64,000 nt of DNA, from positions 124,001 through 188,000 of IMG/VR virus record IMGVR_UViG_3300019458_000021; one strand, 5' to 3'. Shown one piece after another: positions 19,668-48,006 of this stretch. Each line of letters opens with the position of its first letter. Position 1 is the first letter of the stretch. A program made the position numbers and the translations under genes. The notes beneath the pieces were generated by a model. That model had not been told where the DNA came from and searched no databases. It saw only the letters and a program-made list of their open reading frames with translations.

Positions 19668-19882
19668 TCAAGATGTCTGTCTGAGATACGCTATCGCAGC
19701 TTGCAAAATCGCATGCCCTGTTGCTCTCGCAACAGCTGAACATCCTTCAGTGTAATACCATATAGCGATTTAATCCGCGCATTGTGTTTTGGTATTCGTA
19801 GTTTGTCTCGATTATCAGCATGATATTGGCGTTGATAATCTTTATACGCCTGCAAATTTGCTTCAGCCCACTTATTCTGCAT
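19668..19882 (-). pseudogene. endonuclease VII-like HNH gene with catalytic core deleted
   Basis: N-terminal KSLYGITLKDVQLLREQQG joined (frame change) to C-terminal AILQAAIAYLRQTS*; the CxxC/DHDH/RGLLC core is missing. Confidence 0.7.
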
Positions 19883-19900
19883 ACCTTGCCCCCTTGAGAC

Positions 19901-19928
19901 TATTTATCGTTCAATTTCTATGTAAATA
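19901..19928. promoter_or_regulatory. divergent late promoters
   Basis: TATTTAT (19901-19907, minus-strand ATAAATA) and GTAAATA (19922-19928, plus) between divergent operons. Confidence 0.55.
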
Positions 19929-19949
19929 CACGGAACATTTGAGGAACTC

Positions 19950-21107
19950 ATGAGTGTAATCACTACCAGACCAACCGGCGTTGCTGCATGCTGTCCTATT
20001 TTGTCCAATATTCCAGTTGTTGCTCAACTGCAGCCAATTGCTGGAATGGTTATTGTCAATGCCGCTGCCACAACAGCGATTGACGCGATCCCATTGGCGG
20101 ATTATCGTGGTGCGAAATGGTTCGTTGCTGTTGTAAACCACCACACGAACGATGTTGACATGTACGAAGTGTATGGGATCCACCAAGACGGAACAGCACC
20201 GTTCCATACTGTGTATTCGATCCAAGGCAATGGTGTCAATCACACGGTTGATGTCGTGATCAGTGGCGCCAATCTCCAGTTGGAGGTGACAAACAACGAA
20301 TCTAATGAAATAGTTGTTTATGTCACAAGAATGCCTGTACCACGAGTAACTACACCAACTATACCAATTCCTACAGATTTTGAAGCAATCCACGTTATTC
20401 AAATTCCTGACACAACAATTCCTGCTGGGGACACGGTAAATGTTGATACGGTTCCTTTTCGGTATCATAAAGCTGAAAAATGGTTGTTAACACTGCTTGA
20501 TCTTACAGCAGGGAATATTGAAGCACGTGAAGTATACAGCGTGCACGGAGTTGGACAATTCACTGATACGGAATATGCTATTGTAGGTCCTGTAGGAATA
20601 AATGCAACAATCGAAGTCGTTGTTTCTGGTACAACGGTTGTTCTGCGCGTTGAGAACAATGAAGCAAACGACATTGCGATTGTTGGTTCGCGCGTGCCGA
20701 TTTCGACAAATCAAATCACCGTAACAGCTCCGACAACGAATTGTGTAACTATTCCAGGAAATTGCATCGGAGATGTGGACTGCGCGATTCTGTTAACGTA
20801 TGCAACGGGTGTAAGTATTCCACCAGCAACAACGGTAATTGTTGATCAGGTAAATCATGTAAATTATCATCAAGTCAAGTGGTTGTTAGCTGCTTCAGAT
20901 GATTCAACGGATACAACAATGGGCTTTCAAGTGAACATGGTGTCACATTATGGAAACCCATCTCATACTGTTTATTCACAAATTGCTGCTGGATTAAATC
21001 TTGACGTTGATGTCGTGACGTCTGGTTTGAATGTTAATCTAGAAATCACGAACAATGAGGCATTTACCGTCGTTGTCGACGTAGTTCGAGTGCCTGTTTC
21101 AATGTGA
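19950..21107 (+). CDS. virion protein with three tandem beta-sandwich repeats
   Basis: Three KW(F/L)..., (Y/R)EVY..H, ...NL.LE(V/I)TNNE units. Confidence 0.7.
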   Translation: MSVITTRPTGVAACCPILSNIPVVAQLQPIAGMVIVNAAATTAIDAIPLADYRGAKWFVAVVNHHTNDVDMYEVYGIHQDGTAPFHTVYSIQGNGVNHTVDVVISGANLQLEVTNNESNEIVVYVTRMPVPRVTTPTIPIPTDFEAIHVIQIPDTTIPAGDTVNVDTVPFRYHKAEKWLLTLLDLTAGNIEAREVYSVHGVGQFTDTEYAIVGPVGINATIEVVVSGTTVVLRVENNEANDIAIVGSRVPISTNQITVTAPTTNCVTIPGNCIGDVDCAILLTYATGVSIPPATTVIVDQVNHVNYHQVKWLLAASDDSTDTTMGFQVNMVSHYGNPSHTVYSQIAAGLNLDVDVVTSGLNVNLEITNNEAFTVVVDVVRVPVSM

Positions 21108-21113
21108 TAAATA
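21107..21113 (+). promoter_or_regulatory. late promoter ATAAATA
   Basis: Upstream of the 21136 gene. Confidence 0.6.
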
Positions 21114-21135
21114 ACTGATAACAAAGGATTGCTAG

Positions 21136-25643: not shown

Positions 25644-26227
25644 TGGCCGATGCCTTTAATACAGTCACAAAGGAATTGATCCAAAGCGTTGACGCAACGC
25701 TTGTGAGGTCTGATCACATTCTCTTCATTAAAAGCCGTGACAACTCCGACTATCAAGCGTTGGTTCAAGCTGGTGTACCAATGAGATATTGGAAGGTGGT
25801 CGCTGACCGGCTTGTTGAAATGTCAACACCTGAGAAAGATGCCGTTGATGCAATACTGCTTGGCACACTTAAGGATCGTGTTATCAATAAAATCAGTGTG
25901 CAGGAAGAAAAGTACTTCCGTCATGTGGCAACATTTAGCTGGAATGGATTTGCTTTCAGTCTTAGTCTCGATTCACAAGTGAAATGGTTGTACTTGTTTC
26001 AGGCGAGGAACTCTTTGACTTATCCGTATCGCGTGGCTGCACGAAACGATGTCGATTTTTACGACGTTCCAGATGCCAGCACAATTGTGTCGATGTCACA
26101 AGCTGCCATGGCAGCAATGAACAACGTTTTCACTAAAGTAACAACTGCAAAAGAACAAATTAGGCAAGCAACAACTGTCGATGAAATTCAGACGATTTAT
26201 GACAACTTGGTTGCAAGCGTAGGATAA
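25643..26227 (+). CDS. fibre-associated/assembly protein (DUF4376-like C-terminus)
   Basis: FSLSLDSQVKW, AKEQIRQATTVDEI. Confidence 0.55.
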   Translation: MADAFNTVTKELIQSVDATLVRSDHILFIKSRDNSDYQALVQAGVPMRYWKVVADRLVEMSTPEKDAVDAILLGTLKDRVINKISVQEEKYFRHVATFSWNGFAFSLSLDSQVKWLYLFQARNSLTYPYRVAARNDVDFYDVPDASTIVSMSQAAMAAMNNVFTKVTTAKEQIRQATTVDEIQTIYDNLVASVG

Positions 26228-26232
26228 ACACA

Positions 26233-26952
26233 ATGACCACTGATTTCCACCGAGCGAAACGAGGACTAGAGATTGTCGTTAGTCCAACTTCTTTCGTTCA
26301 GTTGTTAACCGACACCGCAGCACCAAACGTGCAGCCAGATGCGCAAAATGCACCAGTCGGTTCATTGTGGATCGTCAACGCGGGCACGCCCATTACAACA
26401 GCCATTTACCAGAAATTCCAGGACGTGTTCAACACAAGTGCAGACTGGGTCAACGTTACAAGTGGTTCAACGGAGGAAGCTGCGATACGAGCGTTCATTG
26501 GTAAGGACGCAGCGGGCATGGAAACGCCAGATTATGCCAACCCAACAGGGGGTGGTCCGTATGATGTTGGTAACATCATTGGTACAAATGACAACCTTGA
26601 ATTAGCCACAGCGAAACTTAACGCTTTTGTCTATCAGAACAACGCTGAGACAAAAGGAACAAACGTACTAACGATTTCAGACACGTTGCCGGTGGGCGTA
26701 AATATTGCAAAATGGCTTGTTCGGGTCAATGGAAATGCTGACCCGACGCGTGTTCGAGCACGTGAAGTATTCGCGATTCGAAATAACGCAAACACCGTTG
26801 ACTTTTCAACATCCAACTTGTTGTCGTTGGGGAGTACAGTTACTGGTTTGACTTACACTGTTACGTCTGTTGGATCGCAGCTGATTTTAACCGTATCGGC
26901 AGCAATAGCATTCGACTATGAAATCAAGCGCTTGGCCGCTGTAGGACCATAA
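26233..26952 (+). CDS. virion protein
   Basis: DFHRAKRGLEI N-terminus shared with 21136 (DFHRITKGLEI); C-terminal AKWLV..RAREVFA unit shared with 19950. Confidence 0.65.
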   Translation: MTTDFHRAKRGLEIVVSPTSFVQLLTDTAAPNVQPDAQNAPVGSLWIVNAGTPITTAIYQKFQDVFNTSADWVNVTSGSTEEAAIRAFIGKDAAGMETPDYANPTGGGPYDVGNIIGTNDNLELATAKLNAFVYQNNAETKGTNVLTISDTLPVGVNIAKWLVRVNGNADPTRVRAREVFAIRNNANTVDFSTSNLLSLGSTVTGLTYTVTSVGSQLILTVSAAIAFDYEIKRLAAVGP

Positions 26953-26953: not shown

Positions 26954-28417
26954 ATGCCTGATATCTCTCTTGCATATACTTTGAATGAAAATGGTCTGGC
27001 GTTGTTAATCAACGACACGCCAACACATTCATCCGTTACGGCAGGTGTTGCTGATCCAACAGTCACCGGATTTTCAACCGAACAAGGTGCGATTTACCTG
27101 CGCACAGATGGCACCTTGTACATCAAAACTGGCGCATTGGACACGGATTGGTCTATCGCTGCGACGGAAGATTTCGTTGCTGCCGGTTTTCAGCCTTTAG
27201 ATTCCGACCTAACAGCGTTAGCAAGCACGGTTACGACCGGCCTGTATACGATCACCGGTGTCGGAACATCAGCAACTCGATCTCTTGTTCAACCAGCTGC
27301 TGGCATCACAATCACCAATCCAGATGGTGTTGCTGGCAACCCGACGTTTGCACTCGCAAATGATTTGGCTGCATTGGAAGGTTTGGCCGGAACTGGACTT
27401 GCCGTTCGGATCGCTCTTGATACGTGGACCCAACGAACAATTCAAGGAACAACGAACAGAATCTCTGTGTCAGACGGCAACGGTGTTGCAGCTGATCCGG
27501 CAATTGACATTGCTGCAACCTACGTTGGACAAACATCAATTACAACACTTGGTACGATTACAACCGGCGTGTGGAATGGTACAACAATAGCAATTGCCAA
27601 CGGTGGTACAGGACAAACAACGCAAACAGCGGCCTTTGACGCGTTAGCGCCAACAACAACGAAGGGCGATTTGATTGTTCATGATGGTGTTGATAACGTT
27701 CGTCAAGCGGTCGGAACCAACAACTTTGTTTTGACTGCCGACTCATCAACAGGCACGGGCATTAAGTGGGCAGCTGTTGCTGGTACGGTTTTGCAACTGT
27801 ATCACGAAAATCCCGTCACGCCGACAGCAAGTACAGTTGGTGGCAACAACTCAGTTGCAATTGGACAAGGACAAACAGCATCTGGTCAAGACAGCATTGT
27901 TGTGGGTGGAGCCAACAATACAGCTTCAGCTACGTATTCGTTTGCTCAAGGCAATCGTGCCGTAGCAAGCAGTTACGGACAAGCATCCCAAGCAAGTGGA
28001 CGCTTCACGGCAGATGGGGATGCTCAAACGTCCGTGCTTGTTCTACGAACACAAACAATCAATACTGCAACAGTCACTGAAATGTTTCTAGATGGGGTAG
28101 GTGGTACACAACGAATGGTACTCCCGAACGATACAACCTGGGGATTTCGAATTCTTGTTGCTGCTCGTGAAACGGGTGCTGACAACTTCTCTGCAATTTA
28201 CTCATTTGTTGGAGGTATTGATAGAAATGCATCTGCGGCATCAACGGCAATTGTTGGCACAGTCAGCAAGACTGTCGTTGCTGAAGATGACGTTGATTGG
28301 GATTGCAACGTTAACGCTGATACAACTAACGGATCGCTGCGTATTCAAGTTACGGGTGAAGTAGGAGATGACATCAACTGGGTAGCTCGAGTTGAACGGG
28401 TGGAGGTAACAGGCTAA
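26954..28417 (+). CDS. tail fibre-like protein
   Basis: PAAG..NPT.ALANDLAALEG module, YadA-like AIGQGQTAS repeats, C-terminal beta domain. Confidence 0.7.
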   Translation: MPDISLAYTLNENGLALLINDTPTHSSVTAGVADPTVTGFSTEQGAIYLRTDGTLYIKTGALDTDWSIAATEDFVAAGFQPLDSDLTALASTVTTGLYTITGVGTSATRSLVQPAAGITITNPDGVAGNPTFALANDLAALEGLAGTGLAVRIALDTWTQRTIQGTTNRISVSDGNGVAADPAIDIAATYVGQTSITTLGTITTGVWNGTTIAIANGGTGQTTQTAAFDALAPTTTKGDLIVHDGVDNVRQAVGTNNFVLTADSSTGTGIKWAAVAGTVLQLYHENPVTPTASTVGGNNSVAIGQGQTASGQDSIVVGGANNTASATYSFAQGNRAVASSYGQASQASGRFTADGDAQTSVLVLRTQTINTATVTEMFLDGVGGTQRMVLPNDTTWGFRILVAARETGADNFSAIYSFVGGIDRNASAASTAIVGTVSKTVVAEDDVDWDCNVNADTTNGSLRIQVTGEVGDDINWVARVERVEVTG

Positions 28418-28578
28418 TGGAACTTCTCACACGAGCACAAGCCATTAAACTTGATCTACCAAAGTATTTCACTGGAAAACCGTGTAAATATGTTTGTGGT
28501 TTACACTGTTGGGCTAACTTACAGTTACTGGACAAGTCTGCTAATGGAAGTAAGCACGACACATATCAAGCAGACTAG
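28417..28578 (+). pseudogene. HNH endonuclease stub with in-frame internal deletion (53 aa; not in the ORF track)
   Basis: MELLTRAQAIKLDLPKYFTGKPCKY fused to VCGLHCWANLQLLDKSANGSKHD; both halves are typical ends of phage HNH proteins; TAATG coupling. Confidence 0.75.
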
Positions 28579-28593
28579 TAAGGGAGAACTACC

Positions 28594-30366
28594 ATCGATT
28601 TCGATTTTAGTACGGAAACAATCACTCCTACCACAGGTACGACATTAACATTGTCGGCCATTGGTTCCGTCGTGATTCCTTTTGGTGCAACGGGCGATCG
28701 TCCGGGCGTGCCGGGCGCTGGTCACACTCGATACAATACAACTCTAGATACTTTGGAGTTTTATAACGTCACCGCCACCGCATGGCAAATCGCTGGTAAT
28801 ACCGAAACGAATGGTATTGGTGGCCTAACAACAACCGGTGTGGTTGTTCGGACAGGTACTGGTACGTACACAACTCGAACAATTGCCGGTACAGCAAACC
28901 AGATTACATTAACGAATGGTGATGGTGTTGCGGCTGCGCCAACAGTATCAGTACCATCTACATTTATCGCGCCTGGTACGGTTCAAGCCACAGGCAGCTT
29001 CATTGCAGCTACTGCAACCAACTCGTACACCTCAACTACAGGCACAGCAATAACATTACATCCAGGAGCTGCTGCTACAGCAACGTCTGTTGGAAACACT
29101 TTAACGTTGACTGGTGGAGCTGGTGGTGGCACATCTGGCGCCGGTGGTGCACTTACACTTAATGGAGGTGTCCCAACTTCTGGTGCTGGAGGAGCAATCA
29201 CGATCGCAGCTGCAGCAGGCGTCGGTGGCAATAACGTCGGTGGCAACTTGTCGTTAACTTCTGGCAATTCCGTCGGTTCGGGTACAGGCTCAACTGTTAC
29301 GGTTACGTCAGGTGCTGGTGGTTCAACGGGAGTTGGTGGAGCAATCTCTATCACGTCAGGTGCTGGTGGAAGCACATCCGGTTCAAGTGGTGCTATTACA
29401 ATTCTGACGGGAACAGTGACAAGTGGAACACCAGGCACTCTTACATTGCAAACTTCGAATGCGACTGGTACAAACCAAAATGGTAGCAACGTAATTGTTA
29501 CAGCTGGCACTGGTACAGGCAATGGTACAAACGGTTATGTTGACATGAGTGCAACAATTAATAGTTTGTTGCTTCCAACTGGTACAACAGCACAACGCTC
29601 AGGTACAGCTACAGCCGGTATGATCCGTCATAATACCAGCACGAACATTCCTGAAATCTTCCACAGCAGTGAGTGGGTTGAAATTGGTATGGATGGTGCT
29701 CGTGGATTTGGTATGTTGTGGGACGACTTTATCAAAGATGTTCTCAATGGTACGACGTGGGAAGTTACACTTTCGGGTACTGGTGCAACGGTTGATAGTG
29801 TTTCAACGGGGGTTAACTCAACCGACTCGGCACTTGGTGTAATGCAACTTGAAACAGGAACGACAACAACTGGTCGTGCAGCTGTTGGTTCAAGTAATGT
29901 CGGACTTGCTTTTGGATTCGGCTATCACTATCTAGAAATGCGAGTAATGTTCCCAACACTATCAACCGCAGCGCAAGAATATGATGGTTACGCGGGTTTT
30001 ATGGACATGTTTGGAGCAAGTGGTAACGGTACCGACGGTGCGTATTTTCACTATGATAGAAACAACTCGACGAACTGGCGAATTCGTGTCATTGGTGGTG
30101 GCACATCATCCGTAACAAGCACTTCGACAGCTGTTACTGCAGGGCAGTGGTATCGTTTGGGTATTGAAGTAAATGCAGCGGGTACAACCGTTGATTTCTA
30201 TATCAATGGTGTTAATGTTGGTCAACACACGGGCGGTAACATTCCAACTGCTGGTGAATTCTTTGGACTTGGATGGAAAATTGAAAAACAAGCTGGTACA
30301 ACGAACAGAACAATGCTAGTCGATTACATTAAATATGCATATCGATTAACCAATGCAAGGACATAA
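28594..30366 (+). CDS. Gly-rich tail fibre-like protein; probable ATC start
   Basis: SD AAGGGAG then 7 nt then ATC GAT TTC GAT TTT, in frame with the track ORF 28651..30366; (G/S)GAGGAIT repeats; C-terminal lectin-like domain. Confidence 0.7.
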   Translation: MDFDFSTETITPTTGTTLTLSAIGSVVIPFGATGDRPGVPGAGHTRYNTTLDTLEFYNVTATAWQIAGNTETNGIGGLTTTGVVVRTGTGTYTTRTIAGTANQITLTNGDGVAAAPTVSVPSTFIAPGTVQATGSFIAATATNSYTSTTGTAITLHPGAAATATSVGNTLTLTGGAGGGTSGAGGALTLNGGVPTSGAGGAITIAAAAGVGGNNVGGNLSLTSGNSVGSGTGSTVTVTSGAGGSTGVGGAISITSGAGGSTSGSSGAITILTGTVTSGTPGTLTLQTSNATGTNQNGSNVIVTAGTGTGNGTNGYVDMSATINSLLLPTGTTAQRSGTATAGMIRHNTSTNIPEIFHSSEWVEIGMDGARGFGMLWDDFIKDVLNGTTWEVTLSGTGATVDSVSTGVNSTDSALGVMQLETGTTTTGRAAVGSSNVGLAFGFGYHYLEMRVMFPTLSTAAQEYDGYAGFMDMFGASGNGTDGAYFHYDRNNSTNWRIRVIGGGTSSVTSTSTAVTAGQWYRLGIEVNAAGTTVDFYINGVNVGQHTGGNIPTAGEFFGLGWKIEKQAGTTNRTMLVDYIKYAYRLTNART

Positions 30367-30368: not shown

Positions 30369-33300
30369 GTGGATTCCGGCTACACACTAACACTAGACGA
30401 ACTTAAGGAATACAATATTCGTCTCGTAAATGAAATTTACGAAGAAACGATTAACGGAGGATTTAGTTACGATAGTAATATCTATGCTTCATCAGAAGAT
30501 GCACGCGACGATATTGACAATGCTATCGTTAATGCACTTACTCGTCGTGTTCAGGATGAACAATTTGATCCAGGATTTGTGTGGTATACAGCAGCCGGCA
30601 CAGCTGTTACTTTTACAGCTGATGAGATTATTGAGCTTGGTGATACGCTGCGACAGTTTCTTGCAGCCGCTAAAAGCAACGCACAGGATCATATTGATGC
30701 AATTAATGCATTTAGTGTGTATCAAGACTTGGCTGATTACGACATCACAACCGGCTGGCCAACCAACACAACGATGTGGACGCCTGAAACATTTGTTGCG
30801 TTAAGTTCTCCAAGCGTACAAGACTCTGATGCTGATCTGGACGCAATCGCAGGGTTGTCAACTACAGGTATTATTGCGAGGACAGGGCCTGGCACAGCAA
30901 CGACTAGAACAATAACACAACCAGCTGCTGGTATTACAGTAACTGACGGCGACGGTGTTGCTGGAAATCCAACTTTGGCTTTGGCAAACGATCTTGCTGC
31001 TTTAGAAGGTTTTGGAAGCACCGGTTTTGCAGTACGTATTGCCAGCGATAGTTGGGCTCAACGGACAATCACCGGCGCCACGGGTCAGATTACGTTAACA
31101 TTTGGTAATGGTGTAGCTGCTAACCCTCTTATTCAAATTGCATCTAATCCAACATTGCCTGGCAACCAATATGTAATTCTGCCAGGTGGAAGTACGGCAA
31201 ATCGTCCTTCCACACCATCCGGAGCAATGGCACGGTACAACGCCGAGTTGCATATTTTCGAAGGCTATATTGCTGGTAGTACAAACGATTGGCTTGATCT
31301 TACAAAGCAAGGAACTGTTACGTCCGTTGACGTAACAGGCAGTACAGGGCTGACGCCTTCTGGTGGTCCGATCACAACTTCCGGATCAATCACACTAACA
31401 CTTGATACTGGTCTTCAGAATCTTGCAACATTTGCGTCAACAGGTCTTGTTGTTGCAACTGGCACAGATACATGGACGGCACGATCTCTTGCGTCTGGAG
31501 CAGGAATCAATATAACAAACGCTGACGGCGTAAGTGGTAACCCAACAATTTCAAGTACAATTACTCAATATACAGACGAATTGGCACAAGATGCGATAGG
31601 AACTATTTTGACAGATAGTTCATCGATTGATTTCACATATGATGATGGTGCACCAAGTATTACAGCTACCGTTATCGACAACACTTCAACACAAAGAGTC
31701 GAAGTGGTAAAAAATAGTGGTGCTGTTGTCGGAACACGCAAACAACTGAATTTTGTTGAAGGCAGTAATATTACTTTAACGATTGCTGACGATACAGGCA
31801 ACGATCAAGTTGATATTACTATTGCATCGTCAGGTGGTGGAGGCGGAGCTCCTGCAGACGCAACGTACGTTACATTAACTACAAATGCGACTCTTACTAA
31901 TGAACGTGTACTAACAGGCACAATAAACCAGATTGATATTACAGATAATGGTGCTGGAAATACTGTTGTTCTTTCCTTACCATCAATCTTAGTTGCACCA
32001 GGAAGCGTTCAAGCAACAACTAATTTTATTGCAGGAACAGCAACAGACTCGTTCACAACAACGACTGGTACAAATTTAACTATCCACCCTGGTGCAGCAT
32101 CGAACGCAACAGCTGTTGGAAACACTTTAACCGTAAGCGGAGGTCCTGGTGGTGGGACTTCAGGTGCAGGTGGTGCTGTTACCATTCAAGGTGGTATAGC
32201 AACAAGTGGTGCAGGTGGTGCTGTTACCATCGCGGGTCGAGTCGGCGTTGGCACAAATCAAGATGGTGGAAATGTTTCAATCACCGCTGGTAATCCAACT
32301 GGTACGGGCACAGCTGGAGCAGTTACAATCTCGTCTGGAGCACTCCAGGGTGCTGGAACGCCTGGTAATATTAACATATTAGCTGGCAATGGTAACGGCA
32401 GTACAACCGGTGGACAGATTCTTATTCGTGGTGGTTCTGGTGGAACGTCAGGTAATGGTGCACAAGTAACTGTTACAGGAGGACTTGGTGGTTCTACATC
32501 CGGTAACGGTGGTTCTGTTCTTATCCAGGGCGGACAAACATTTGGAGGTGCTGGAGGCGTCGTAACCGTTCAAGGCAACAATGGTGTTGGCACAAATCAA
32601 GCAGGTGGTGGTGTAACTATTAAAGGAGGATCCGCAACTGGTTCTGGTGCTGCTGGATTAACTCGAGTTGTTGGTGCTACAGGCGCAACAAATGAAACGC
32701 CTGGTGCTGTCTCAATTGAAGGCGGTCCTGCTCAGGGAAGTTCTTTGGGTGGTCAAGTTGTTATTATTGGTGGTACGGCTGCTGGTGTAGGAGCTGGAGG
32801 TCAAGTCAGTATTTCTGGTGGTACAGGAGGTAGTACCAGTGGTGTTGGCGGTGAAGTTTTGATTCGTGGAGGACTTCCAGTTTCCGGTGCCGGTGGACCT
32901 GTTAACATCACTGGTCGTGATGGTGTTGGTACGAACCAAAATGGCGGTGCAATTACACTAACAGGTGGTGCTGCAACTGGTTCTGGATCCGGTGGTAATA
33001 TAAGCTTTATAGCTGGACCTTCACCATCAGGCACAGATGGATCAATCATCTTCACTACAGATGGTACCGAACGATTTGAAATTCGTGGTAATGGCGGATG
33101 GGAAGTTGGTGGTTTACAAGGCACCTCCGGGCAAGTTTTAACGTCAAACGGTGCAAACACCCCACCAACATGGTCAACTATGATCTTCACCCGAGGAGGT
33201 ACGGTTTTATCTCCATCGGTTGCTAATATAATAGTATGGAGAGCGCCGTTTGCGTGTACGGTAACAAATGTTCGTGGTTATCGAGTAGGCGGAACAGGTG

Positions 33301-40129: not shown

Positions 40130-43100
40130 ATGCGTGTTACTTTTAGACAAGGTACAGTTGCCAACGCTGTCGTTTCAACATACAGCATGGGCACCAGCAA
40201 TATTTCAGGTTTTTTCGTTAACCTGAGTGTGCCAAACCCGAACTTCCCAGTAACATACCATTTCGCTGACGGGAACCGAAACTATTTGCATGCATTCCGT
40301 TTGACACGTGCAGATGCTTGGGGTCCTTTCCTTCCTGGCATTGACGCATATCTGTACGTTGATATCAACACAAGTACAGGTGCAATCAGCTTCGGGTCAA
40401 GCGCATTTGATCCAGTTGTTGCAGTAACTGCTCCACCATCACCAGCACAAGATCAGCACTGGTTCGACATGCTGAACAAGCAGATGAAGGTGTGGGATAG
40501 CGTTGCAATGCAATGGGTTCGCAAGGTTCGTGTGTTCGTTGGCAAGTTGTCGCTTGGCGCTCTGCCACTAGTCAGCATGTCTATCAACGCTGGTTTGTCG
40601 AACTCCAACGCAAGCTACTACCTTGGCACAACAATTGGTGATCAGTCACCAAACTCTGCTGGTTTCATCCTGTTCAACAACAATGGTGATGTTCTCCGTC
40701 GTAGTGATGGTACATTCATCACTACTGAAGACACACTGATCGCTGAAGGTGTTCAAGAATCCGCTCCAATCACATTTGCGACAAACACACTTGCAGCTGT
40801 TGCAAGCGCCTCTCTATCCGCATACACAATGGTTGCGTTTTCAGCACCAGGTGAAGTTAGTGCGATGACCGACCTTGATGTCAACTCAAAGGTATACGGT
40901 ATCATCGTTGAGAGCGTAGCAATGGGTGGAACGGTCACAGTTGTCACACAGGGTATTGTTAACAACCCGCTGTGGAGCTGGCCAACGGTTAATGCTCCGT
41001 TGTATGTCGACGGTACAGGCCAACTGACAACAACTCGTCCAGCTTCTGCGCCAGATCCTGTTGCAGCAGTTGTCGATGAATTCACAATCTACTTACTCGC
41101 ATGCGACGTCAACGTTCCAAGTGATATCTTCGATATTACATACGTGAACACAGCTGGCGATACAATGACCGGTTCGTTGATCATGACCGGCGCTGGCACA
41201 CAGGTCGTTCTAACAAACGCACCAACACTCGGTTCACACGCTGTCAACAAGACCTACTCCGATGCTCAGCTCGCTGCACACGCTGCTGATTTCACCCTGC
41301 ATGTAACAGCAAACCAGAATGGCATGCTAGACACGTTAGAAGCAGGCGGCAACGGAATCGTTGTTAAGAATGCAACGGCAACAACAGTCACACGCTCGCT
41401 TGTAGCACCTGCAGCTGGCTTGACAATCACAAACCCAGATGGTGTTGTTGACAACCCAACGTTTGCTCTTGCAAATGATCTTGCAGCGCTTGAAGGTCTT
41501 GGAACATTTGGATTTGCAACGCGTACTGGTGTTGATACGTGGTTGACACGTACAATGACAGGCACAGCTGGCAACATCGTAGTAACAAACGGTGATGGTG
41601 TTTCAGGTGTCCCAACATTTGACTTGGCTCCTATCGTCCAAGGCGTTGGCGGTACACTTAGCAAAGTCACACTCGACGGTTTCGGTCGTGTAACACAAAA
41701 CACACCAGTGGTTGTAGCAGACATTACAGCGCTCGTTGATGGAACGTATGTCAACGTAACCGGTGACACAATGTCCGGCAACTTGGCAATGGGTGGTTTC
41801 AAGGTTACTGGTCTTGCAAATGGTACGGTATCCGGTGATGCGCTTCATTTTGGTCAGATCGGTGCTCAAGTTCAAGGATGGGACGCAGATCTTGACGCAG
41901 TCGCAGCGCTTGCATCAACGGGATTGATGGTTCGCACAGGTGCTGGTACAGCAGCAACACGTTCGCTTGTAACAGCTAGCTCAGCACGTATCACTGTTGC
42001 AGATGGTGACGGTGTTGCCGCAAATCCAACGGTTGATCTTGCACTCCTTGCTGATGCCGGTACAGGTACGTTCCTGAAGATTACTCGCGATGCGTGGGGC
42101 CGTGTGTCTGGAACGACACCAGTTCTCGCAGCCGACGTGACAGGTTTGATTAGTGCAACATATGTTGACACAGCTGGCGACACAATGACCGGTGCTTTGT
42201 TGCATCCTGCAGGTACAGCAGCAGCTCCATCGATTTCATTCTCAGGCGGCGTTGGACACACAAACAAGGGTTGGTACAATAGTGGCGTTGATGAGTTCAG
42301 TGCAGCCATTGCTGGTGCGCAGAAGGTTTTGATTGATGCGGCTGGTGTAACAACATTCAGCGGATTCATTCAGGGAGCACCTGGCTCGTTGGCTTTGGAG
42401 TCAGCAGTTAACGCGCCAGGTATGGTTGGTGTTAACTTCCTTCTTCCAGGTACAATGGACGTGTTCATTGGCGGAGCGCCTATCGCAACATTTGGTCCTG
42501 GTCCAACATTCACTATTGGTGGTTCTGTAGCTCTAACAGCTGCAGATCTTGGCGTAACCGTTCAAGATTGGAGTGCAACGCTTGATGCCGTAACAGCAGG
42601 AACATATACTGGTGCAGCATCAATCACAACCGTTGGAACAATCACAACTGGTGTTTGGGATGGCACAGATGTTGCTGTTACAGCAGGTGGTACAGGTGCA
42701 TCAACCGCCGCTGGCGCTAGGACAAATCTGGGTGTTGGAACGGGCGACAGTCCAGAATTCCTGGCTGTTAACATTGGTCACGCTTCCGATACAACCATTA
42801 CCCGGGTAAGTGCTGGTGTAATTGCTGTTGAAGGTTCCAACGTATTGCTAGCAAGTGGTCTTGGTTCTATCACACAGGCTTGGGACGCAGGTCTTGATGA
42901 ATTGGCCGCACTAGCAACAAATGGTCCAATCCGTAGGACTGGCGGTGCATTTGTTGTAGGTAGCCCAACACTTGATGAAGTTACAAACGCTGCTGCAAGT
43001 GCTTCTCGCTCACACGGCAACAACACAATTGAATGGGAATGGTCCCGTACATCTATTGGACCAACGTTCTGGTTTGATGAAGCCGCTGCCGCAACGGGTG

Positions 43101-43765
43101 GTAGTGATCTAAACCAGCCTCTGGTTTTGGTTCGAACATTAGCTGGATCAACAGCAGCTCCGTTTGCTGTGTTAAGCACAGAAGGTTCCGCAAGTTACTT
43201 GATGGCCGTTGCTCGTGTAGCAACAACAACCGGTTACGATCTGCGACTTCGAAGTGGTGATCATACAACAGGCCACGCTGGTAACGTTACGGTCACAGGT
43301 GGTAGTGGTATTGCAGCCGCAAGCAATGGTGGTAACGTTACTCTTACAGCTGGTACAGGTACAACAACTGGTGCTGGTGGTGACATTTCTATTACTGCAG
43401 GTGCAACAGGTACCTCAGGGCTTGCTGGTGACATCGTCGTGACCGCGGGTGCTGGAGGAACTACCGGTACAGCTGGTGTTATTACAATCTCTGGTGGCGC
43501 CGGCGGTACCACAACAGGAAATGGTGGTAATGTTCGTATGCAGGGTGGTGCGTTTACTTCAGGTGACACAGGAAACGTTGTTGCAGGTCGTGGTACAACA
43601 ACCACGACTCGTAACGGTGACTTCTTGCAGATTCCAACAGTATCAGGAGCTCCAACAGGAACACCAGTGAACGAATCAGGTATGGTTTCAATTGTCTTCC
43701 GTACTGACACAAACCAAATCTATGTTTACGACGGTGCATGGTTGTCAACAGCAGCCCTCACATAA
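40130..43765 (+). CDS. long tail fibre protein (paralog of 36661)
   Basis: 1211 aa; same N-domain (FRQG, PAQDQHWF, RRSDGTFITTED); PAAG modules; Gly-rich C-terminal region. Confidence 0.75.
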   Translation: MRVTFRQGTVANAVVSTYSMGTSNISGFFVNLSVPNPNFPVTYHFADGNRNYLHAFRLTRADAWGPFLPGIDAYLYVDINTSTGAISFGSSAFDPVVAVTAPPSPAQDQHWFDMLNKQMKVWDSVAMQWVRKVRVFVGKLSLGALPLVSMSINAGLSNSNASYYLGTTIGDQSPNSAGFILFNNNGDVLRRSDGTFITTEDTLIAEGVQESAPITFATNTLAAVASASLSAYTMVAFSAPGEVSAMTDLDVNSKVYGIIVESVAMGGTVTVVTQGIVNNPLWSWPTVNAPLYVDGTGQLTTTRPASAPDPVAAVVDEFTIYLLACDVNVPSDIFDITYVNTAGDTMTGSLIMTGAGTQVVLTNAPTLGSHAVNKTYSDAQLAAHAADFTLHVTANQNGMLDTLEAGGNGIVVKNATATTVTRSLVAPAAGLTITNPDGVVDNPTFALANDLAALEGLGTFGFATRTGVDTWLTRTMTGTAGNIVVTNGDGVSGVPTFDLAPIVQGVGGTLSKVTLDGFGRVTQNTPVVVADITALVDGTYVNVTGDTMSGNLAMGGFKVTGLANGTVSGDALHFGQIGAQVQGWDADLDAVAALASTGLMVRTGAGTAATRSLVTASSARITVADGDGVAANPTVDLALLADAGTGTFLKITRDAWGRVSGTTPVLAADVTGLISATYVDTAGDTMTGALLHPAGTAAAPSISFSGGVGHTNKGWYNSGVDEFSAAIAGAQKVLIDAAGVTTFSGFIQGAPGSLALESAVNAPGMVGVNFLLPGTMDVFIGGAPIATFGPGPTFTIGGSVALTAADLGVTVQDWSATLDAVTAGTYTGAASITTVGTITTGVWDGTDVAVTAGGTGASTAAGARTNLGVGTGDSPEFLAVNIGHASDTTITRVSAGVIAVEGSNVLLASGLGSITQAWDAGLDELAALATNGPIRRTGGAFVVGSPTLDEVTNAAASASRSHGNNTIEWEWSRTSIGPTFWFDEAAAATGGSDLNQPLVLVRTLAGSTAAPFAVLSTEGSASYLMAVARVATTTGYDLRLRSGDHTTGHAGNVTVTGGSGIAAASNGGNVTLTAGTGTTTGAGGDISITAGATGTSGLAGDIVVTAGAGGTTGTAGVITISGGAGGTTTGNGGNVRMQGGAFTSGDTGNVVAGRGTTTTTRNGDFLQIPTVSGAPTGTPVNESGMVSIVFRTDTNQIYVYDGAWLSTAALT

Positions 43766-43783: not shown

Positions 43784-43811
43784 AGGGCCGCCTTGTGCGG
43801 CCCTGTTGTTT
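43784..43811 (+). terminator. hairpin after fibre gene
   Basis: AGGGCCGC-CTTGT-GCGGCCCT followed by a GTTGTTT tail. Confidence 0.55.
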
Positions 43812-43815
43812 GGTG

Positions 43816-43823
43816 TATAAATA
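43816..43823 (+). promoter_or_regulatory. late promoter TATAAATA (full T4 consensus)
   Basis: Exact TATAAATA, then AAGGAG SD. Confidence 0.75.
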
Positions 43824-43842
43824 AAGCATAAGGAGAAACAAA

Positions 43843-44475: not shown

Positions 44476-44521
44476 TTGGTGGTTTGACTTCGATCAATCA
44501 TAAATACCCATGGTGTTGAAG

Positions 44522-44550
44522 TTGACACCAATCAGAAGTGAATGTAAAGT
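44522..44550 (+). promoter_or_regulatory. sigma70-like promoter
   Basis: TTGACA-17 nt-TAAAGT upstream of gp32. Confidence 0.6.
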
Positions 44551-44608
44551 GAACCAGCTTTTTTCTTGAAGAGAAAAGTTATAACAATTAGAAGCGAGGA
44601 TAACAACT

Positions 44609-45562
44609 ATGACAACAAAACTCACTCTCGAACAGCTTCGCGCTAACATCGGTCAAGATGAACAAGGCGAACGCGTCGGTCTCCCAAACAACTACTTTCC
44701 ATTCTGGAAGATGAAAGAAGGCGAACGAGCAGTTATTCGTTTCCTACCCGATAAGAATCCAGAGAACCCACGTGGCTTCCTAGCACAGAAGGTAATGCAC
44801 GTTCTCGAAATCAATGGGGAAAAGAAGTCTGTCCCATGTCTTTCGATGTACGGTGAAGATTGCCCAATTTGCAAGGCATCTCAAGACTTTTACAAGGTTG
44901 AGGGAAAGGAAAGCCCAAACGGTAAGAAGTACTGGAAGAAGAAGCAGCACATCGCACAGGCAATCGTTCTGGAAGATCCACTTCCAGCCGACGAGAAGAC
45001 TGGTGAAACACATGTAGGCAGGGTTCGCTACATCGCTCTCGGATTCCAACTGTGGCAGATCATTCAGAACGCATTTAAGAGCTCTGAAACACTGGAAAGC
45101 ATCCCGTACAACTTCGATGATGGATATGACTTCATCATTCAGAAGGACAAGGGACCGAAGTACCCAACATACCAACTCAACTCGAAGTTCCGCGCTAGGC
45201 AGCGTGCACTCACAGAAGACGAACTCGCAATCGCAGCGGAAGGCATGTCAGATCTGGCAGCGCTTCTTCCAAAGCACCCAGGTCGTGAGAAAGTCGAAGA
45301 GATGCTTCACGCAGCTCTGACAGGTGCGAACTATCAGGGTAGTGGTGTCGACGGGGACAGTATTCCTGATCCGGATGATGTTACGCCAGCACGGAAGCCA
45401 GTGGTAGCCGTTAAGCCTACTCTTGACGATGAACCATTTGTAGCTCCAAAACAAACTGCACCTGCTAAGCCAGAGTCTGCAGACGCGCAAAGCGACGTTG
45501 ATGAAATGCTCGCTACGATCAAAGCACGTCGAGCAGCTCAAAAGGCAGCATCAGCAGCGTAA
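44609..45562 (+). CDS. single-stranded DNA-binding protein (T4 gp32-like)
   Basis: IRFLPDKN, CLSMYGEDCPICK, GYDFIIQK..YPTY, acidic/Ala-rich tail; upstream of UvsX. Confidence 0.85.
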   Translation: MTTKLTLEQLRANIGQDEQGERVGLPNNYFPFWKMKEGERAVIRFLPDKNPENPRGFLAQKVMHVLEINGEKKSVPCLSMYGEDCPICKASQDFYKVEGKESPNGKKYWKKKQHIAQAIVLEDPLPADEKTGETHVGRVRYIALGFQLWQIIQNAFKSSETLESIPYNFDDGYDFIIQKDKGPKYPTYQLNSKFRARQRALTEDELAIAAEGMSDLAALLPKHPGREKVEEMLHAALTGANYQGSGVDGDSIPDPDDVTPARKPVVAVKPTLDDEPFVAPKQTAPAKPESADAQSDVDEMLATIKARRAAQKAASAA

Positions 45563-45567
45563 TGAAC

Positions 45568-45595
45568 AAGAGGGTGGCTCAGCCACCCTCTTTCT
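45568..45595 (+). terminator. intrinsic terminator
   Basis: AAGAGGGTGGC-TCA-GCCACCCTCTT followed by TCTC. Confidence 0.7.
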
Positions 45596-45610
45596 CACAA
45601 GGAGACTACC

Positions 45611-46717
45611 ATGGGAAATAGTTTAGGGTTTCTCGACGACTTTAACAAAGAACTCGAGGAAATGGAAGGTGTTGGCACATCTTCAAAACCACCACGTTAT
45701 TGGTACTCAACTGGTAACTTCGTTCTCAACAAGATCATCTCTGGCAGTTTCGCCAAAGGTATCCCACAAGGACGTGTGACGAATCTTGCTGGACCATCAG
45801 GTGCTGGTAAGAGTTTCGTTGCAGCAAACATTGTTCGTGAAGCACAGCGTCGAGGTGCGATTACACTGGTTATCGACAGTGAGAATGCGCTTGATGACGA
45901 CTTCATGGGCAAGATCGGTGTAAACACCGATCGTTCAACAAAGAAGTACTTCTATGCGGGTGTGGTCACCGTTCAAGATGTAACGCGTGTGTTCTCGAAG
46001 TTCATGAACGCATACAAAGAATCGTGTGCGGAAGATCCAGAAAATGGTCAGGAAATTCTGATCGTTTTAGATAGCATCGACATGCTGCTGACTGAAACAG
46101 AGCAAGAAAACTACGACAAAGGTGTACAGAAAGGCGACCAAGGTCAGAAGAACAGGCAGACGAAAAAGCTACTGAAAACAATGGTTCAAGACATCAAGCC
46201 GTACAACGTAGCTGTGGTTGTAACATCACAGGTCTATCGTAACCAAGATTTGTTAAATGGTGAAGGTCTTTGGATCATCAGTGAAGCGGTGAAGTTCTCT
46301 GCGTCACAGATCATCATGCTGACAAAGCTCAAACTGAAGGAAGCGGGCGAATCAATTGTCCACGGCATTCGTATGAAGTGTGAAGGTTACAAAACACGAT
46401 TTACTAAGCCGTATCAAACAGTGACAATCGAAGTTCCGTATGATACTGGGATGGATCCATACTCCGGTCTTATCGAAACTGCAGTCGAAATGGGTGTGGT
46501 TGAGACGAAGGGCTCGCGGTACGTGATCGACGGCGAAGACGAATCATGGTATAAAAAGGATGTTGCAGCCGTTGCTGATCGAATCTTGGTCAAGGCGGAG
46601 GCAAAAACAGAAGCATATCTTAAAGCTCGTATTGATGAGGCGATGGAAGCTGAAGAGGATGGTGAGTCGAAAGACGACACAGCAACACGCCGTCGCTTGA
46701 AGAGGGCAAAAAAATGA
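45611..46717 (+). CDS. uvsX: RecA-like recombinase
   Basis: WYSTGNFVLN, GPSGAGKS Walker A, IDSENALD, LDSIDML, SR/KTRFTKPYQTVTIEVPYDTGMDPYSGL. Confidence 0.92.
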   Translation: MGNSLGFLDDFNKELEEMEGVGTSSKPPRYWYSTGNFVLNKIISGSFAKGIPQGRVTNLAGPSGAGKSFVAANIVREAQRRGAITLVIDSENALDDDFMGKIGVNTDRSTKKYFYAGVVTVQDVTRVFSKFMNAYKESCAEDPENGQEILIVLDSIDMLLTETEQENYDKGVQKGDQGQKNRQTKKLLKTMVQDIKPYNVAVVVTSQVYRNQDLLNGEGLWIISEAVKFSASQIIMLTKLKLKEAGESIVHGIRMKCEGYKTRFTKPYQTVTIEVPYDTGMDPYSGLIETAVEMGVVETKGSRYVIDGEDESWYKKDVAAVADRILVKAEAKTEAYLKARIDEAMEAEEDGESKDDTATRRRLKRAKK

Positions 46718-46908
46718 AGGCGAGCCAACTACCAGCGTATAAAATCATCACATCGTTAAGCTACGACCTTGATAGGTTGACAGCAGCCGTCAATCAATTT
46801 GTTGCAGAGACGCCTGGTCAGTGGATCTGTGTTGGCCCTCCGTTCCAAGCATCGATAGCGGCCGGTGAGCACCGCGGCATGGCACAAGCGTTGGAGCGAA
46901 AAGATTGA
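46714..46908 (+). CDS. small protein, DUF1737-like
   Basis: 64 aa; ATGA overlap; AVNQF..W.CVGPPF..QAL. Confidence 0.5.
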   Translation: MKASQLPAYKIITSLSYDLDRLTAAVNQFVAETPGQWICVGPPFQASIAAGEHRGMAQALERKD

Positions 46909-46959
46909 CCTTTAATCCAAAATAGTGGACGGTAGTCCGTTCCTTATTAGGAGCTTAAC

Positions 46960-47350
46960 ATGTTCGATAGAAAGAAGCAACGATTGAAGTGGGGAAGGGC
47001 AAACGGCGCGCCATCGCGAAAGTCGGACGTGATAGACGAAAGCAAGAAATGCCTATTCCAGACATGATTCGACGATCGAAGTTTCGTGCTAAACGATTAG
47101 GGTTAGAATTTAATTTATCTGTAGAGGAGTTAACATTACCTTCTTTGTGCCCAGTGTTAGGCATTCCATTATTTTTACATATGGAAAGATCACTCCTAAC
47201 ACACCATCTCAATTGATAGGATTGATAGTTCGCGTGGATATGTGAGTGGGAATTGTCGAATTATCAGCTCACGAGCAAACACTCTTAAAAATGATGCAAC
47301 TGTTACGGAAATGACATTGATTCTTGAAGACCTCAAAAGGATAAACAATG
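46960..47350 (+). pseudogene. degenerate HNH endonuclease (about three frameshifts), same family as 14753
   Basis: SD TAGGAG plus ATG 46960; pieces in different frames: AKRLGLEFNL..CPVLGIPL / TYGKITPNTPS / IDRIDSSRGYVSGNCRIISSRANTLKNDA. Confidence 0.75.
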
Positions 47351-47881
47351 GAAATCTACGACGCACAAGAACTGGCGCAGAGGAATTTGATTGTAAAGCA
47401 CTACGCTGGATCACATGCATACGGTACAGCTCTGCCTACATCCGACATTGACTTTCGCGGAATTTTTGTCGCTCAGCCTGTCAACGTTCGGACACCTTTC
47501 TTTCCAATCACGGAAGTTGAAGTGTCGACTGAACAAGATACAAAACTGTACGAGTTGGCAAACTTCATGAAGCTTGTTGTTGACTGCAACCCGAACGTTG
47601 TTGAAACATTGTGGGTTGCAGATCGCGACATTGTATTCCGTACTCCTGCATACGATTTGCTTCGTAGGCACGCGCCCGATCTGTTGTGTTCGAAGATTGC
47701 TTTCACAACGAGTGGCTATGCCTTGGCACAGTTGAAACGGATCAAGGGACATAACAAATGGATTACACAGGCTGATAAAGGTATAAAAAAACTGCGTCAT
47801 GCTTTCAAGATGAGTGAAATAGATTACAAATGGCTTGAAGAACATTTTGATGAAACAATCGTTAAACGAGTGGTTGAGTAA
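47348..47881 (+). CDS. DNA pol beta-superfamily nucleotidyltransferase, N-terminal half
   Basis: AGSHAYGTALPTSDIDFRGIF (GS..DxD), CNPNVVETLW, GYALAQLKRIKGHNKW. Confidence 0.9.
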   Translation: MEIYDAQELAQRNLIVKHYAGSHAYGTALPTSDIDFRGIFVAQPVNVRTPFFPITEVEVSTEQDTKLYELANFMKLVVDCNPNVVETLWVADRDIVFRTPAYDLLRRHAPDLLCSKIAFTTSGYALAQLKRIKGHNKWITQADKGIKKLRHAFKMSEIDYKWLEEHFDETIVKRVVE

Positions 47882-48006
47882 TGTTTTACGTTTATGGTCT
47901 AATCGATAGTTTCACCAATAAAGTTTTCTATGTTGGTAAGGGCTGCAAAGATACCATCGGAAACACGAGAGAAAATTCGTGCAACACTCAAAAGGAAAGC
48001 AAATGA
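47881..48006 (+). pseudogene. GIY-YIG endonuclease stub between the nucleotidyltransferase halves
   Basis: MFYVYGLIDSFTNKVFYVGKG, plus out-of-frame PSETREKIRATLKRK (NUMOD3-like); TAATG and ATGA couplings on either side. Confidence 0.7.

What the first reader, a model, noticed from the sequence alone, without database searches (positions are those of the whole stretch)
19668..48006. Recurring hollowed-out homing endonucleases: only the N- and C-terminal stubs survive
Seen: three unrelated endonuclease families have each lost their middle while keeping both ends: EndoVII-like 19668-19882, HNH 28417-28578 and GIY-YIG/NUMOD3 47881-48006. The duplicate terL fragment (14255-14669) shows the same kind of internal deletion. 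The 28417 and 47881 stubs stay start/stop-coupled to neighbours, and the 19668 stub lies between a promoter and the next gene. Inference: this genome disarms invaders by one large deletion, possibly microhomology-driven, and keeps the ends because they now carry the coupling, RBS or promoter signals of flanking genes. That differs from gradual decay, which the 46960 HNH shows.
Basis: partly seen in the sequence, partly recalled or inferred. Interest (0 to 1): 0.68.

Follow-up and report, generated by a model that had tools for sequence, protein, structure and literature searches.

The report
Hollowed-out homing endonuclease gene scars
A cave-metagenome jumbo phage carries several dead homing-endonuclease genes reduced to their two ends by internal deletions; this is the ordinary decay of selfish genes wedged between packed essential genes, and a sister strain shows one such deletion freshly made.

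Summary
Stub 1 (19668-19882, minus strand) keeps 56 N-terminal and 14 C-terminal residues of an endonuclease-VII-like gene. Stub 2 (28417-28578) keeps 24 N-terminal and 28 C-terminal residues of a ~170-180-aa HNH gene. Stub 3 (47881-48006) keeps the first 24 residues of a GIY-YIG gene; its "NUMOD3" end is not verifiable. The terL fragment is internally deleted (aa 384-496 missing), but it is also 5'-truncated and foreign (53% identical to the resident terL).

A 60-70%-identical relative (G001) has empty sites at all three stubs. Independent assemblies of two samples reproduce the junctions.

Two new findings:
- A 99.9%-identical sister strain (G002) has lost 250 bp (47007-47256, 2-bp microhomology) from the already frameshifted HNH at 46960. 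That leaves exactly an N+C stub, so hollowing follows point decay rather than replacing it.
- Stub 3 sits inside a host gene. An RlaP-like nucleotidyltransferase that is one ORF in relatives is split here, and the scar supplies the stop, Shine-Dalgarno sequence and ATG.

Best reading: the standard homing-endonuclease degeneration cycle, with random internal deletions filtered by lethality of damage to neighbours. It is not a genome "strategy". This is a new example of a known kind (compare T4 I-TevIII and the Aeh1 split nrdA).

The parts
19715..19882 (-). Stub 1, N-terminal part: 56 codons of an endonuclease-VII-like homing endonuclease gene, ending ...LLREQQG.
   Evidence: phrog_2914 E 0.0036. 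Top tblastn hit of three EndoVII queries in the 237-kb genome. Alignment.
19668..19712 (-). Stub 1, C-terminal part in another frame: 14 codons plus the original TGA. The TGA overlaps the Shine-Dalgarno sequence (GAGGG) of gene 19071-19658.
   Evidence: 8 of 14 residues (57% by tblastn) match the extreme C-terminus of R3-22-T1 EndoVII. Sequence read.
28417..28578 (+). Stub 2: in-frame 53-codon remnant of an HNH gene. N part 28417-28488, one odd codon (Y), C part 28492-28578. Its ATG overlaps the stop of gene 26954-28417 (TAATG).
   Evidence: No protein of 29-93 aa resembles it among 5.8 billion clusters.
47881..47952 (+). Stub 3, N part: first 24 codons of a GIY-YIG homing endonuclease (through YVGKGCKD). 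Its ATG overlaps the stop of the upstream nucleotidyltransferase piece (TAATG).
   Evidence: phrog_5356 E 3.6e-5. tblastn to annotated GIY-YIG homing nucleases. Alignments.
47957..48025 (+). Stub 3, NUMOD3-like stretch in the +1 frame (unverified). Its DNA carries the Shine-Dalgarno sequence (AAGGAAAG) and the ATG (48003) of the downstream piece.
   Evidence: Frame translation. Pfam finds nothing. Own HMM: rank 13 of 8921 fragments.
47768..48057 (+). Whole scar inside the host gene: 290 bp here against 19 bp in G001. It adds a 37-aa tail to the N piece, the 41-codon stub ORF, and a 19-aa leader to the C piece.
   Evidence: Nucleotide alignment to G001. Fused ORFs in G001 and G005.
47348..47881 (+). 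N piece (177 aa) of the split RlaP-like nucleotidyltransferase gene.
   Evidence: PF10127 E 9e-10. 71% identical to the N part of the single 702-aa ORF of G001.
48003..49802 (+). C piece (599 aa) of the split gene. It contains an intein-like 353-aa insert at 48402-49460.
46960..47345 (+). HNH pseudogene (phrog_3322 family) decayed by frameshifts and a stop. It is an insertion relative to G001, and its 3' end carries the Shine-Dalgarno sequence of the nucleotidyltransferase gene.
47007..47256 (+). 250 bp present here and absent in sister strain G002. The position is ambiguous by 2 nt because of CG microhomology. The deletion turns the pseudogene into an N+C stub.
   Evidence: Both alleles are seen in JGI, ENA and Logan assemblies of the two samples.
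14261..14657 (+). Foreign terL 3' fragment: aa 285-383 (14261-14557), then aa 497-529 (14559-14657) in another frame.
   Evidence: tblastn E 1e-31 and 6e-10, 53-55% identity to the resident terL. The region is absent between terL and the kinase gene in G001.
14753..16084 (+). Rest of the inserted cassette: intact HNH (14753-15292), full-length foreign AAA_33 kinase (15213-15767), and a GIY-YIG catalytic domain only (15767-16084).
16038..16385 (+). 5'-truncated resident kinase gene. It shows a deletion that crossed a gene border where the neighbour was redundant.
   Evidence: 54% identical to aa 75-182 of the upstream kinase. Orthologous to the G001 kinase. AAA_33 profile positions 65-140 only.

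Best explanation
These are scars of free-standing homing endonuclease genes (HEGs) at different stages of the ordinary HEG life cycle. Each HEG inserted between or inside tightly packed phage genes, so that its start overlapped the upstream stop and its 3' end came to hold the Shine-Dalgarno sequence or start codon of the downstream gene. Once fixed, the endonuclease is no longer selected. It collects frameshifts and stops, and sooner or later a spontaneous illegitimate deletion with little or no microhomology. A deletion that reaches an essential neighbour or its signals kills the phage, so only deletions lying wholly inside the HEG survive, and those necessarily leave both ends. Where the neighbour is redundant, as with the duplicated kinase, the deletion may cross the border. 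The terL fragment is foreign flank DNA that arrived with an HEG cassette and is decaying the same way. Shown: remnant identity, empty sites in a relative, junctions in independent assemblies, one fresh deletion between sister strains, and the signal overlaps. Inferred: the order of events for stubs 1-3, the viability filter, and that the split gene still works.
For: - Remnant identity.
- Empty sites: G001 is empty at all three stub sites and at the 46960 HNH.
- Not an assembly artefact: Logan contigs of two cave-metagenome runs from two studies span 14100-20000 in one piece. Stubs 2 and 3 are identical in JGI, ENA-MEGAHIT and Logan assemblies of two samples. G002 is gapless and free of differences at stubs 1-2.
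- Deletion seen in action: G002 lacks 47007-47256 of the already broken HNH, with 2-bp microhomology.
- Over about 180 kb shared by the two strains there are only two differences larger than 100 bp. One is this deletion; the other is a 1002-bp in-frame indel in a repeat-bearing fibre-like gene.
- Mixed decay states: four intact phrog_3322 HNH genes, one other HNH, one intact 246-aa GIY-YIG gene, one decayed gene, one 3'-truncated gene and three stubs.
- Only 1 of 5 deletions is in frame, close to the 1/3 expected by chance, so the remnants are not kept as proteins.
- No conserved small-protein relatives: stub 1 finds only itself among 1.84 billion representatives. Stub 2 finds only itself among 5.8 billion clusters.
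- Precedents: T4 I-TevIII is inactive through a large internal deletion, and promoters embedded in seg/mob genes oppose their deletion (PMC2988022, PMC2790892). ICP1 gp174 has a polymorphic 228-bp in-frame deletion (PMC10448857).
Against: - Apart from the junction itself, stubs 1-3 carry no stops or frameshifts in about 500 bp. The 386-bp HNH pseudogene has at least two frameshifts and a stop. The stubs may therefore have been deleted early, or their short ORFs may be kept open by selection for coupling.
- The viability filter is inferred, not measured.
- Only one junction could be mapped exactly, so the deletion mechanism for stubs 1-3 is unknown.
- The EndoVII assignment of stub 1 rests on E-values of about 0.004-0.01.
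- The C-terminal identity of stub 3 is unproven.
Confidence: 0.75

Rival explanations
1. One reading: this phage lineage has a characteristic way of disarming invading HEGs by one large, microhomology-driven deletion, distinct from gradual decay, and selection specifically keeps the ends for their signals.
For: Four or five remnants share the same geometry in one genome. The stub remainders are free of further lesions. The ends do hold the Shine-Dalgarno sequence, start or stop of neighbours.
Against: The one datable deletion hit a gene that was already dead from frameshifts. Its microhomology is only 2 bp. About six HEGs remain intact. Retained ends are several times longer than the signals need. 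The geometry follows trivially from gene packing.
Confidence: 0.12
2. The stubs, or some of them, are now functional: short ORFs kept open as translational-coupling bridges that deliver ribosomes to the next gene, or micro-proteins. For example, stub 2 retains a Cys/His cluster.
For: TAATG and ATGA overlaps. The gene after stub 2 has ATC where G001 has ATG, 15 nt after the stub's stop codon. Both pieces of the split gene remain intact ORFs although the splitter has decayed.
Against: No homologous small proteins exist anywhere. Stub 1's ORF now ends 33 nt before the next start codon rather than 10 nt. There are no expression data, and no variation is available to test for constraint.
Confidence: 0.1
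3. Assembly collapse or chance similarity: the junctions are artefacts, or the short matches are noise.
For: The matches are short and Pfam is silent on stubs 1 and 2. The two samples are related cave metagenomes.
Against: Three assemblers on two samples give the same junctions. The N and C matches are collinear, lie at the termini of the full-length proteins, and fall at sites that are empty in G001.
Confidence: 0.03

Closest known systems
T4 I-TevIII (HNH endonuclease of the nrdB intron), inactive through a large internal deletion while RB3 keeps the intact gene (Eddy & Gold 1991, as cited in PMC2988022 and PMC2790892)
   Same: A phage HEG is inactivated by one big internal deletion that keeps both ends. 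A close relative shows the undeleted state, as window versus G002 does for the 46960 HNH.
   Different: I-TevIII is intron-encoded. The genes here are free-standing and lie between or inside genes. Several families in one genome show the pattern. For stubs 1-3 no intact allele is known.
Aeromonas phage Aeh1 nrdA split by the HNH gene mobE, 'genes in pieces' (Friedrich et al. 2007, cited in PMC2988022)
   Same: A free-standing HEG inserted inside a conserved enzyme gene creates two ORFs with a new stop and a new start. Relatives have one ORF.
   Different: The host gene here is an RlaP-like nucleotidyltransferase. The splitter has decayed to a 126-bp ORF while the split persists. Function of the two pieces is untested (the complex prediction gave no verdict).
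Embedded host promoters and signals in T4 seg and mob genes (PMC2988022, section on transcriptional regulation)
   Same: Signals of essential neighbours lie inside the HEG, so deletions that remove them are counter-selected.
   Different: The signals seen here are translational (stop/start overlaps and Shine-Dalgarno sequences). Promoters are not demonstrated.
Vibrio phage ICP1 gp174, polymorphic 228-bp in-frame deletion inside a T5orf172 HEG (PMC10448857)
   Same: An HEG-internal deletion is polymorphic among near-identical phage isolates.
   Different: That deletion arose between degenerate internal repeats and may only retune specificity. The 250-bp deletion here has 2-bp microhomology and hits a pseudogene.
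Cyclical HEG life cycle: invasion, fixation, degeneration, loss (yeast studies cited in PMC2988022, refs 81-82)
   Same: Intact, point-decayed, hollowed and empty states all occur within one phage clade.
   Different: In a packed phage genome the 'loss' step stalls at a scar, because precise excision is improbable and imprecise excision is lethal.

Membership tests
Degenerate free-standing homing endonuclease gene (HEG remnant) | Sequence similarity to a known HEG family | tested here: met
   Stub 2. Stub 3 N part. Stub 1: (weaker, E 0.004-0.01).
Degenerate free-standing homing endonuclease gene (HEG remnant) | Presence/absence at the same locus among related genomes (an empty site exists) | tested here: met
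   G001 has 12 bp, about 77 bp and 19 bp where the window has stubs 2, 1 and 3. G001 also lacks the 46960 HNH.
Degenerate free-standing homing endonuclease gene (HEG remnant) | Catalytic core missing or broken | tested here: met
   By alignment, stub 1 lacks the Cys cluster and the D-H...N core, stub 2 lacks the D-H of HNH, and stub 3 stops before the conserved Arg/His/Glu.
Degenerate free-standing homing endonuclease gene (HEG remnant) | Ancestral copy was a site-specific, mobile endonuclease | not testable with these tools
   No intact allele of stubs 1-3 was found.
Endonuclease VII, Pfam PF02945 (stub 1) | Match to the family model over its cut-off | tested here: not met
   No Pfam hit at E<=10. 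This is expected if the core is deleted. Only PHROG 2914 hits, at E 0.0036.
GIY-YIG, Pfam PF01541 (stub 3) | Match to the catalytic-domain model over its cut-off | tested here: not met
   Only LEM-3_GIY-YIG at 15.7 bits against a cut-off of 27. The GIY and YIG strands are present and the rest is absent. PHROG 5356 hits at 3.6e-5.
NUMOD3, Pfam PF07460 (3' part of stub 3) | Match to the NUMOD3 model | tested here: not met
   No hit. tblastn of the 24 aa finds nothing. Own HMM gives rank 13 of 8921 fragments, i-Evalue 29.
Genes-in-pieces (host gene split by an HEG) | Orthologues are one continuous ORF across the split point | tested here: met
   G001 has a 702-aa ORF. G005 is unsplit and lacks the intein.
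Genes-in-pieces (host gene split by an HEG) | An HEG, or its remnant, lies exactly at the split and provides the stop and restart | tested here: met
   TAATG at 47879-47883; Shine-Dalgarno sequence plus ATGA at 47990-48006.
Genes-in-pieces (host gene split by an HEG) | The two polypeptides assemble into an active enzyme | tested here: inconclusive
   Complex prediction gave no verdict. Both pieces are intact ORFs 61-71% identical to G001.

The most novel reading that the evidence does not exclude
HEG scars are not just inert leftovers. They are retained short ORFs on which the neighbours now depend. The split RlaP-like nucleotidyltransferase still works as two chains long after its splitter died. 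The fibre-like gene after stub 2 has ATC in place of the ATG seen in G001, and it is translated mainly by ribosomes that terminate on the stub ORF 15 nt upstream. Dead selfish genes would then have been co-opted as translational couplers.
Probability: 0.15. Interest if true: 0.55.

Novelty: new member of a known kind. Interest (0 to 1): 0.35.

Why it matters
The window gives a clean natural series of HEG decay states in one uncultured jumbo phage: intact, frameshifted, freshly hollowed, old stub, and empty site in a relative. One deletion is mapped to the base between two co-occurring strains.

It shows why gene callers report orphan 40-60-aa ORFs wedged between phage genes. It warns that such ORFs and duplicate gene fragments (terL, kinase) are scars and not new genes.

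The split nucleotidyltransferase is a second kind of "genes-in-pieces" case, in which the splitter has died but the split stays. That bears on how selfish elements permanently reshape host gene architecture. None of this overturns current understanding.

Tried and rejected
- megablast of 18 kb against GenBank phages found no match. The phage is known only from metagenomes.
- Pfam on the stubs gave nothing usable.
- Looking for near-identical intact alleles, to test microhomology at stubs 1-3, failed. The IMG/VR protein-pattern scan with stub 2 found only relatives of 72% identity or less. A degenerate DNA pattern for stub 3 found only the sister strain. phmmer of stub 1 against 1.84 billion representatives found only itself. 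The word search with stub 2 found only itself. Microhomology at those three junctions therefore remains untested.
- Search for the donor of the terL fragment: the best other terL is 40-49% identical, so the donor is unknown.
- The idea that the 37-aa tail of the N piece is a diverged duplicate of the start of the C piece was rejected. The alignment score was reached by 62% of shuffles.
- NUMOD3 reading of stub 3: not supported.
- Sigma-70-like promoter scans around the stubs gave no more sites than in shuffles.
- Complex prediction of the N piece with residues 1-133 of the C piece gave no verdict, which is neither for nor against.
Within-sample allele frequencies could not be seen.

Full report
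**Context.** The window is bases 124001-188000 of a 237-kb IMG/VR viral contig, about 68% complete by CheckV. The source is JGI cave metagenome 3300019458. An ENA assembly of the same phage reaches 352 kb. It is an uncultured jumbo phage. Its large terminase is at most 50% identical to that of Xanthomonas phage XacN1, and nothing in GenBank phages matches at DNA level.

Two comparators were decisive:
- G002 (IMGVR_UViG_3300019487_000018) is a sister strain from a second sample, 99.9% identical over about 180 kb.
- G001 (IMGVR_UViG_3300019487_000019) is a syntenic relative at 60-70% protein identity.

**Stub 2 (28417-28578).**
- The 53-codon ORF aligns by residues 1-24 to the N-terminus and by residues 26-53 to the C-terminus of 166-182-aa HNH proteins. 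Examples are Vibrio phage 1.038.O and an intact copy elsewhere in G001.
- The missing ~120 codons include the D-H of the HNH motif.
- Of the 80 best IMG/VR relatives, 42 carry both end motifs, always 304-670 nt apart. Only this phage has them adjacent.
- No protein of 29-93 aa in 5.8 billion clusters resembles the stub. It is not a small protein family of its own.
- G001 has just 12 bp between the two flanking fibre-like genes.

**Stub 1 (19668-19882, minus strand).**
- The first 56 codons hit phrog_2914 'endonuclease VII', profile positions 44-97 of 190, E 0.0036.
- They are also the best hit in the whole genome for three different EndoVII proteins, E 0.005-0.011.
- Two bases further on, in another frame, 14 codons match the last 14 residues of the 93-aa EndoVII of Xanthomonas phage R3-22-T1 (8 of 14 identical, 57% by tblastn). 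Both end at the stop codon.
- About 50 codons holding the Cys cluster and the catalytic core are gone.
- Pfam PF02945 is silent, as expected when the core is missing.
- phmmer against 1.84 billion representatives finds only the stub itself.
- G001 has a ~77-bp divergent intergenic region here.
- The old TGA of the endonuclease overlaps the GAGGG Shine-Dalgarno sequence of gene 19071-19658.

**Stub 3 (47881-48006).**
- The first 24 codons are a clear GIY-YIG N-terminus.
- The 'NUMOD3' stretch is in the +1 frame. Neither Pfam, tblastn nor a small HMM of my own (rank 13 of 8921 six-frame fragments) establishes it.
- In the intact 246-aa GIY-YIG paralogue of this genome (genome 103801-104538, minus strand), the comparable motif lies mid-protein. 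'C-terminal stub' is therefore not shown.

**Stub 3 sits inside a host gene.** This was the more important finding at this locus.
- In G001 one 702-aa ORF covers what the window encodes as 47348-47881 (177 aa, RlaP nucleotidyltransferase family, PF10127) plus 48003-49802 (599 aa). The short contig G005 has the same gene unsplit.
- The scar (47768-48057, 290 bp against 19 bp in G001) supplies the stop codon of the first piece (TAATG) and the stub ORF.
- Within the NUMOD3-like DNA, the scar also supplies the Shine-Dalgarno sequence and the ATG of the second piece (ATGA overlap at 48003-48006).
- This is a 'genes-in-pieces' arrangement like Aeh1 nrdA/mobE (cited in PMC2988022), but with the splitter itself now dead.
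- Both host pieces are intact ORFs, which suggests they are still selected. A complex prediction gave no verdict.

**terL fragment and cassette.**
- The fragment matches terL aa 285-383 (E 1e-31) and then jumps to aa 497-529 (E 6e-10) with a frame change at 14557/14559. The internal deletion is real.
- It is only 53% identical to the resident terL, and 47% identical to G001's terL. The resident gene is 68% identical to G001's. Its conserved motifs are intact.
- It is therefore recently acquired foreign DNA and not a duplicate.
- It heads a ~1.9-kb cassette absent from G001. The cassette holds the terL' fragment, an intact HNH (14753-15292), a full-length foreign AAA_33 kinase (15213-15767) and a GIY-YIG catalytic domain only (15767-16084). 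It abuts the resident kinase, which is cut down to its last ~110 residues (16038-16385).
- Here a deletion crossed a gene border, and it did so where the neighbour was redundant.

**A deletion caught in the act.**
It is an insertion relative to G001.
- In G002 the same pseudogene lacks 250 bp (window 47007-47256). The junction is ambiguous by the dinucleotide CG.
- What remains is 16 N-terminal and about 30 C-terminal codons in different frames, which is exactly the 'hollowed-out' geometry.
- Both alleles are reproduced by JGI, ENA-MEGAHIT and Logan assemblies of the two samples.
- Across the ~180 kb shared by the strains there are only two differences above 100 bp. One is this deletion. The other is a 1002-bp in-frame indel in a repeat-bearing fibre-like gene.
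- Hollowing can thus follow point decay, with minimal microhomology.

**Artefact check.**
- Logan contigs from two runs of two studies each cover 14100-20000 in one piece, with 1 and 4 base differences (the second also has a 2-bp insertion).
- G002 has no differences in stubs 1 and 2.
- Stubs 2 and 3 are identical in four further assemblies.
- Assembly collapse is excluded as far as contigs can show. Raw reads were not available.

**Inventory.** Besides the stubs, the genome holds:
- four intact HNH genes of the phrog_3322 family and one other HNH;
- one intact GIY-YIG gene;
- an intein-like element;
- the truncated GIY-YIG and the decayed HNH.

The genome does not uniformly 'disarm' its invaders.

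**Interpretation.** The pattern is what the known HEG life cycle predicts for a genome in which genes overlap by start and stop.
- Deletions are random. Only 1 of 5 is in frame, the retained ends are 45-170 nt, and the one exact junction has 2-bp microhomology.
- Only deletions wholly inside the HEG are viable, so both ends always remain. The ends do carry the neighbours' stop codons, Shine-Dalgarno sequences and start codons.
- Both elements of the idea are already published for T4: I-TevIII is inactivated by a large internal deletion, and signals embedded in seg/mob genes oppose deletion (PMC2988022, PMC2790892). A polymorphic HEG-internal deletion is known in ICP1 (PMC10448857).
- One loose end favours a stronger role for the scars. 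The stub remainders carry no further lesions, and the gene after stub 2 has ATC where G001 has ATG, 15 nt after the stub's stop codon. I give about 15% to real dependence on the stub ORFs for translation.

Noticed in passing
window 48402-49460: The C piece of the split nucleotidyltransferase carries a 353-aa intein-like insert. It starts with Cys and ends ...HSN followed by Ser. It gives weak hits to a solved intein (E 0.021) and to LAGLIDADG_3 (E 0.008). It is present in G001 and precisely absent in G005. With the upstream HNH pseudogene and the GIY-YIG scar, that makes three selfish elements on one gene.
   Followed up: partly
window 28579-28660: The fibre-like gene after stub 2 (SO2946-like C-terminal domain) has ATC at 28594 where G001 has ATG. 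A good Shine-Dalgarno sequence (AAGGGAGA) lies 6 nt upstream. The first canonical start codon is TTG at 28651, although the 19 codons before it are conserved with G001. Gene callers start it at 28672. The sequence is identical in four assemblies.
   Followed up: partly
G001 (reverse complement of 40001-120000), about 25844-26860: The relative's terL has an in-frame insert of about 1 kb with LAGLIDADG-like motifs in the Walker-A region (a probable intein). The insert is absent from the window's terL. The window instead has the HEG cassette just downstream. terL is a hot spot in both phages.
   Followed up: partly
window about 41896-42880: A 1002-bp in-frame indel separates the window from sister strain G002 inside the 1211-aa fibre-like gene 40130-43765. 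It is bounded by 17 identical bases. Fibre genes here share repeated segments (for example 27290, 30918, 41380, 42601).
   Followed up: partly
window 15213-16385: There are two AAA_33 kinase copies: a full-length foreign one (15213-15767) and a 5'-truncated resident one (16038-16385, 54% identical). A 105-aa GIY-YIG catalytic domain without a DNA-binding region lies between them.
   Followed up: partly
window 14750-14753: G002 and the second sample carry an extra AT directly before the ATG of the intact HNH gene 14753-15292. This changes the spacing between its Shine-Dalgarno sequence and its start codon.
   Followed up: no
window 47768-47880 and 48003-48059: The 37-aa tail of the N piece and the 19-aa leader of the C piece have no detectable relatives (PHROGs found none for the tail). 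The tail is not a diverged copy of the C piece, and the origin of both stretches is unexplained.
   Followed up: partly
window 46714-46908: A 64-codon ORF with no family match sits between the RecA/UvsX-like gene (45611-46717) and the HNH pseudogene. It lies in DNA that G001 lacks.
   Followed up: no
G001 (reverse complement), 31051-31740: The relative has an intact 229-aa HNH plus NUMOD3 endonuclease gene between the homologues of window genes 18682-19074 and 19071-19658. That site is empty in the window, so HEG occupancy differs site by site between the two phages.
   Followed up: no
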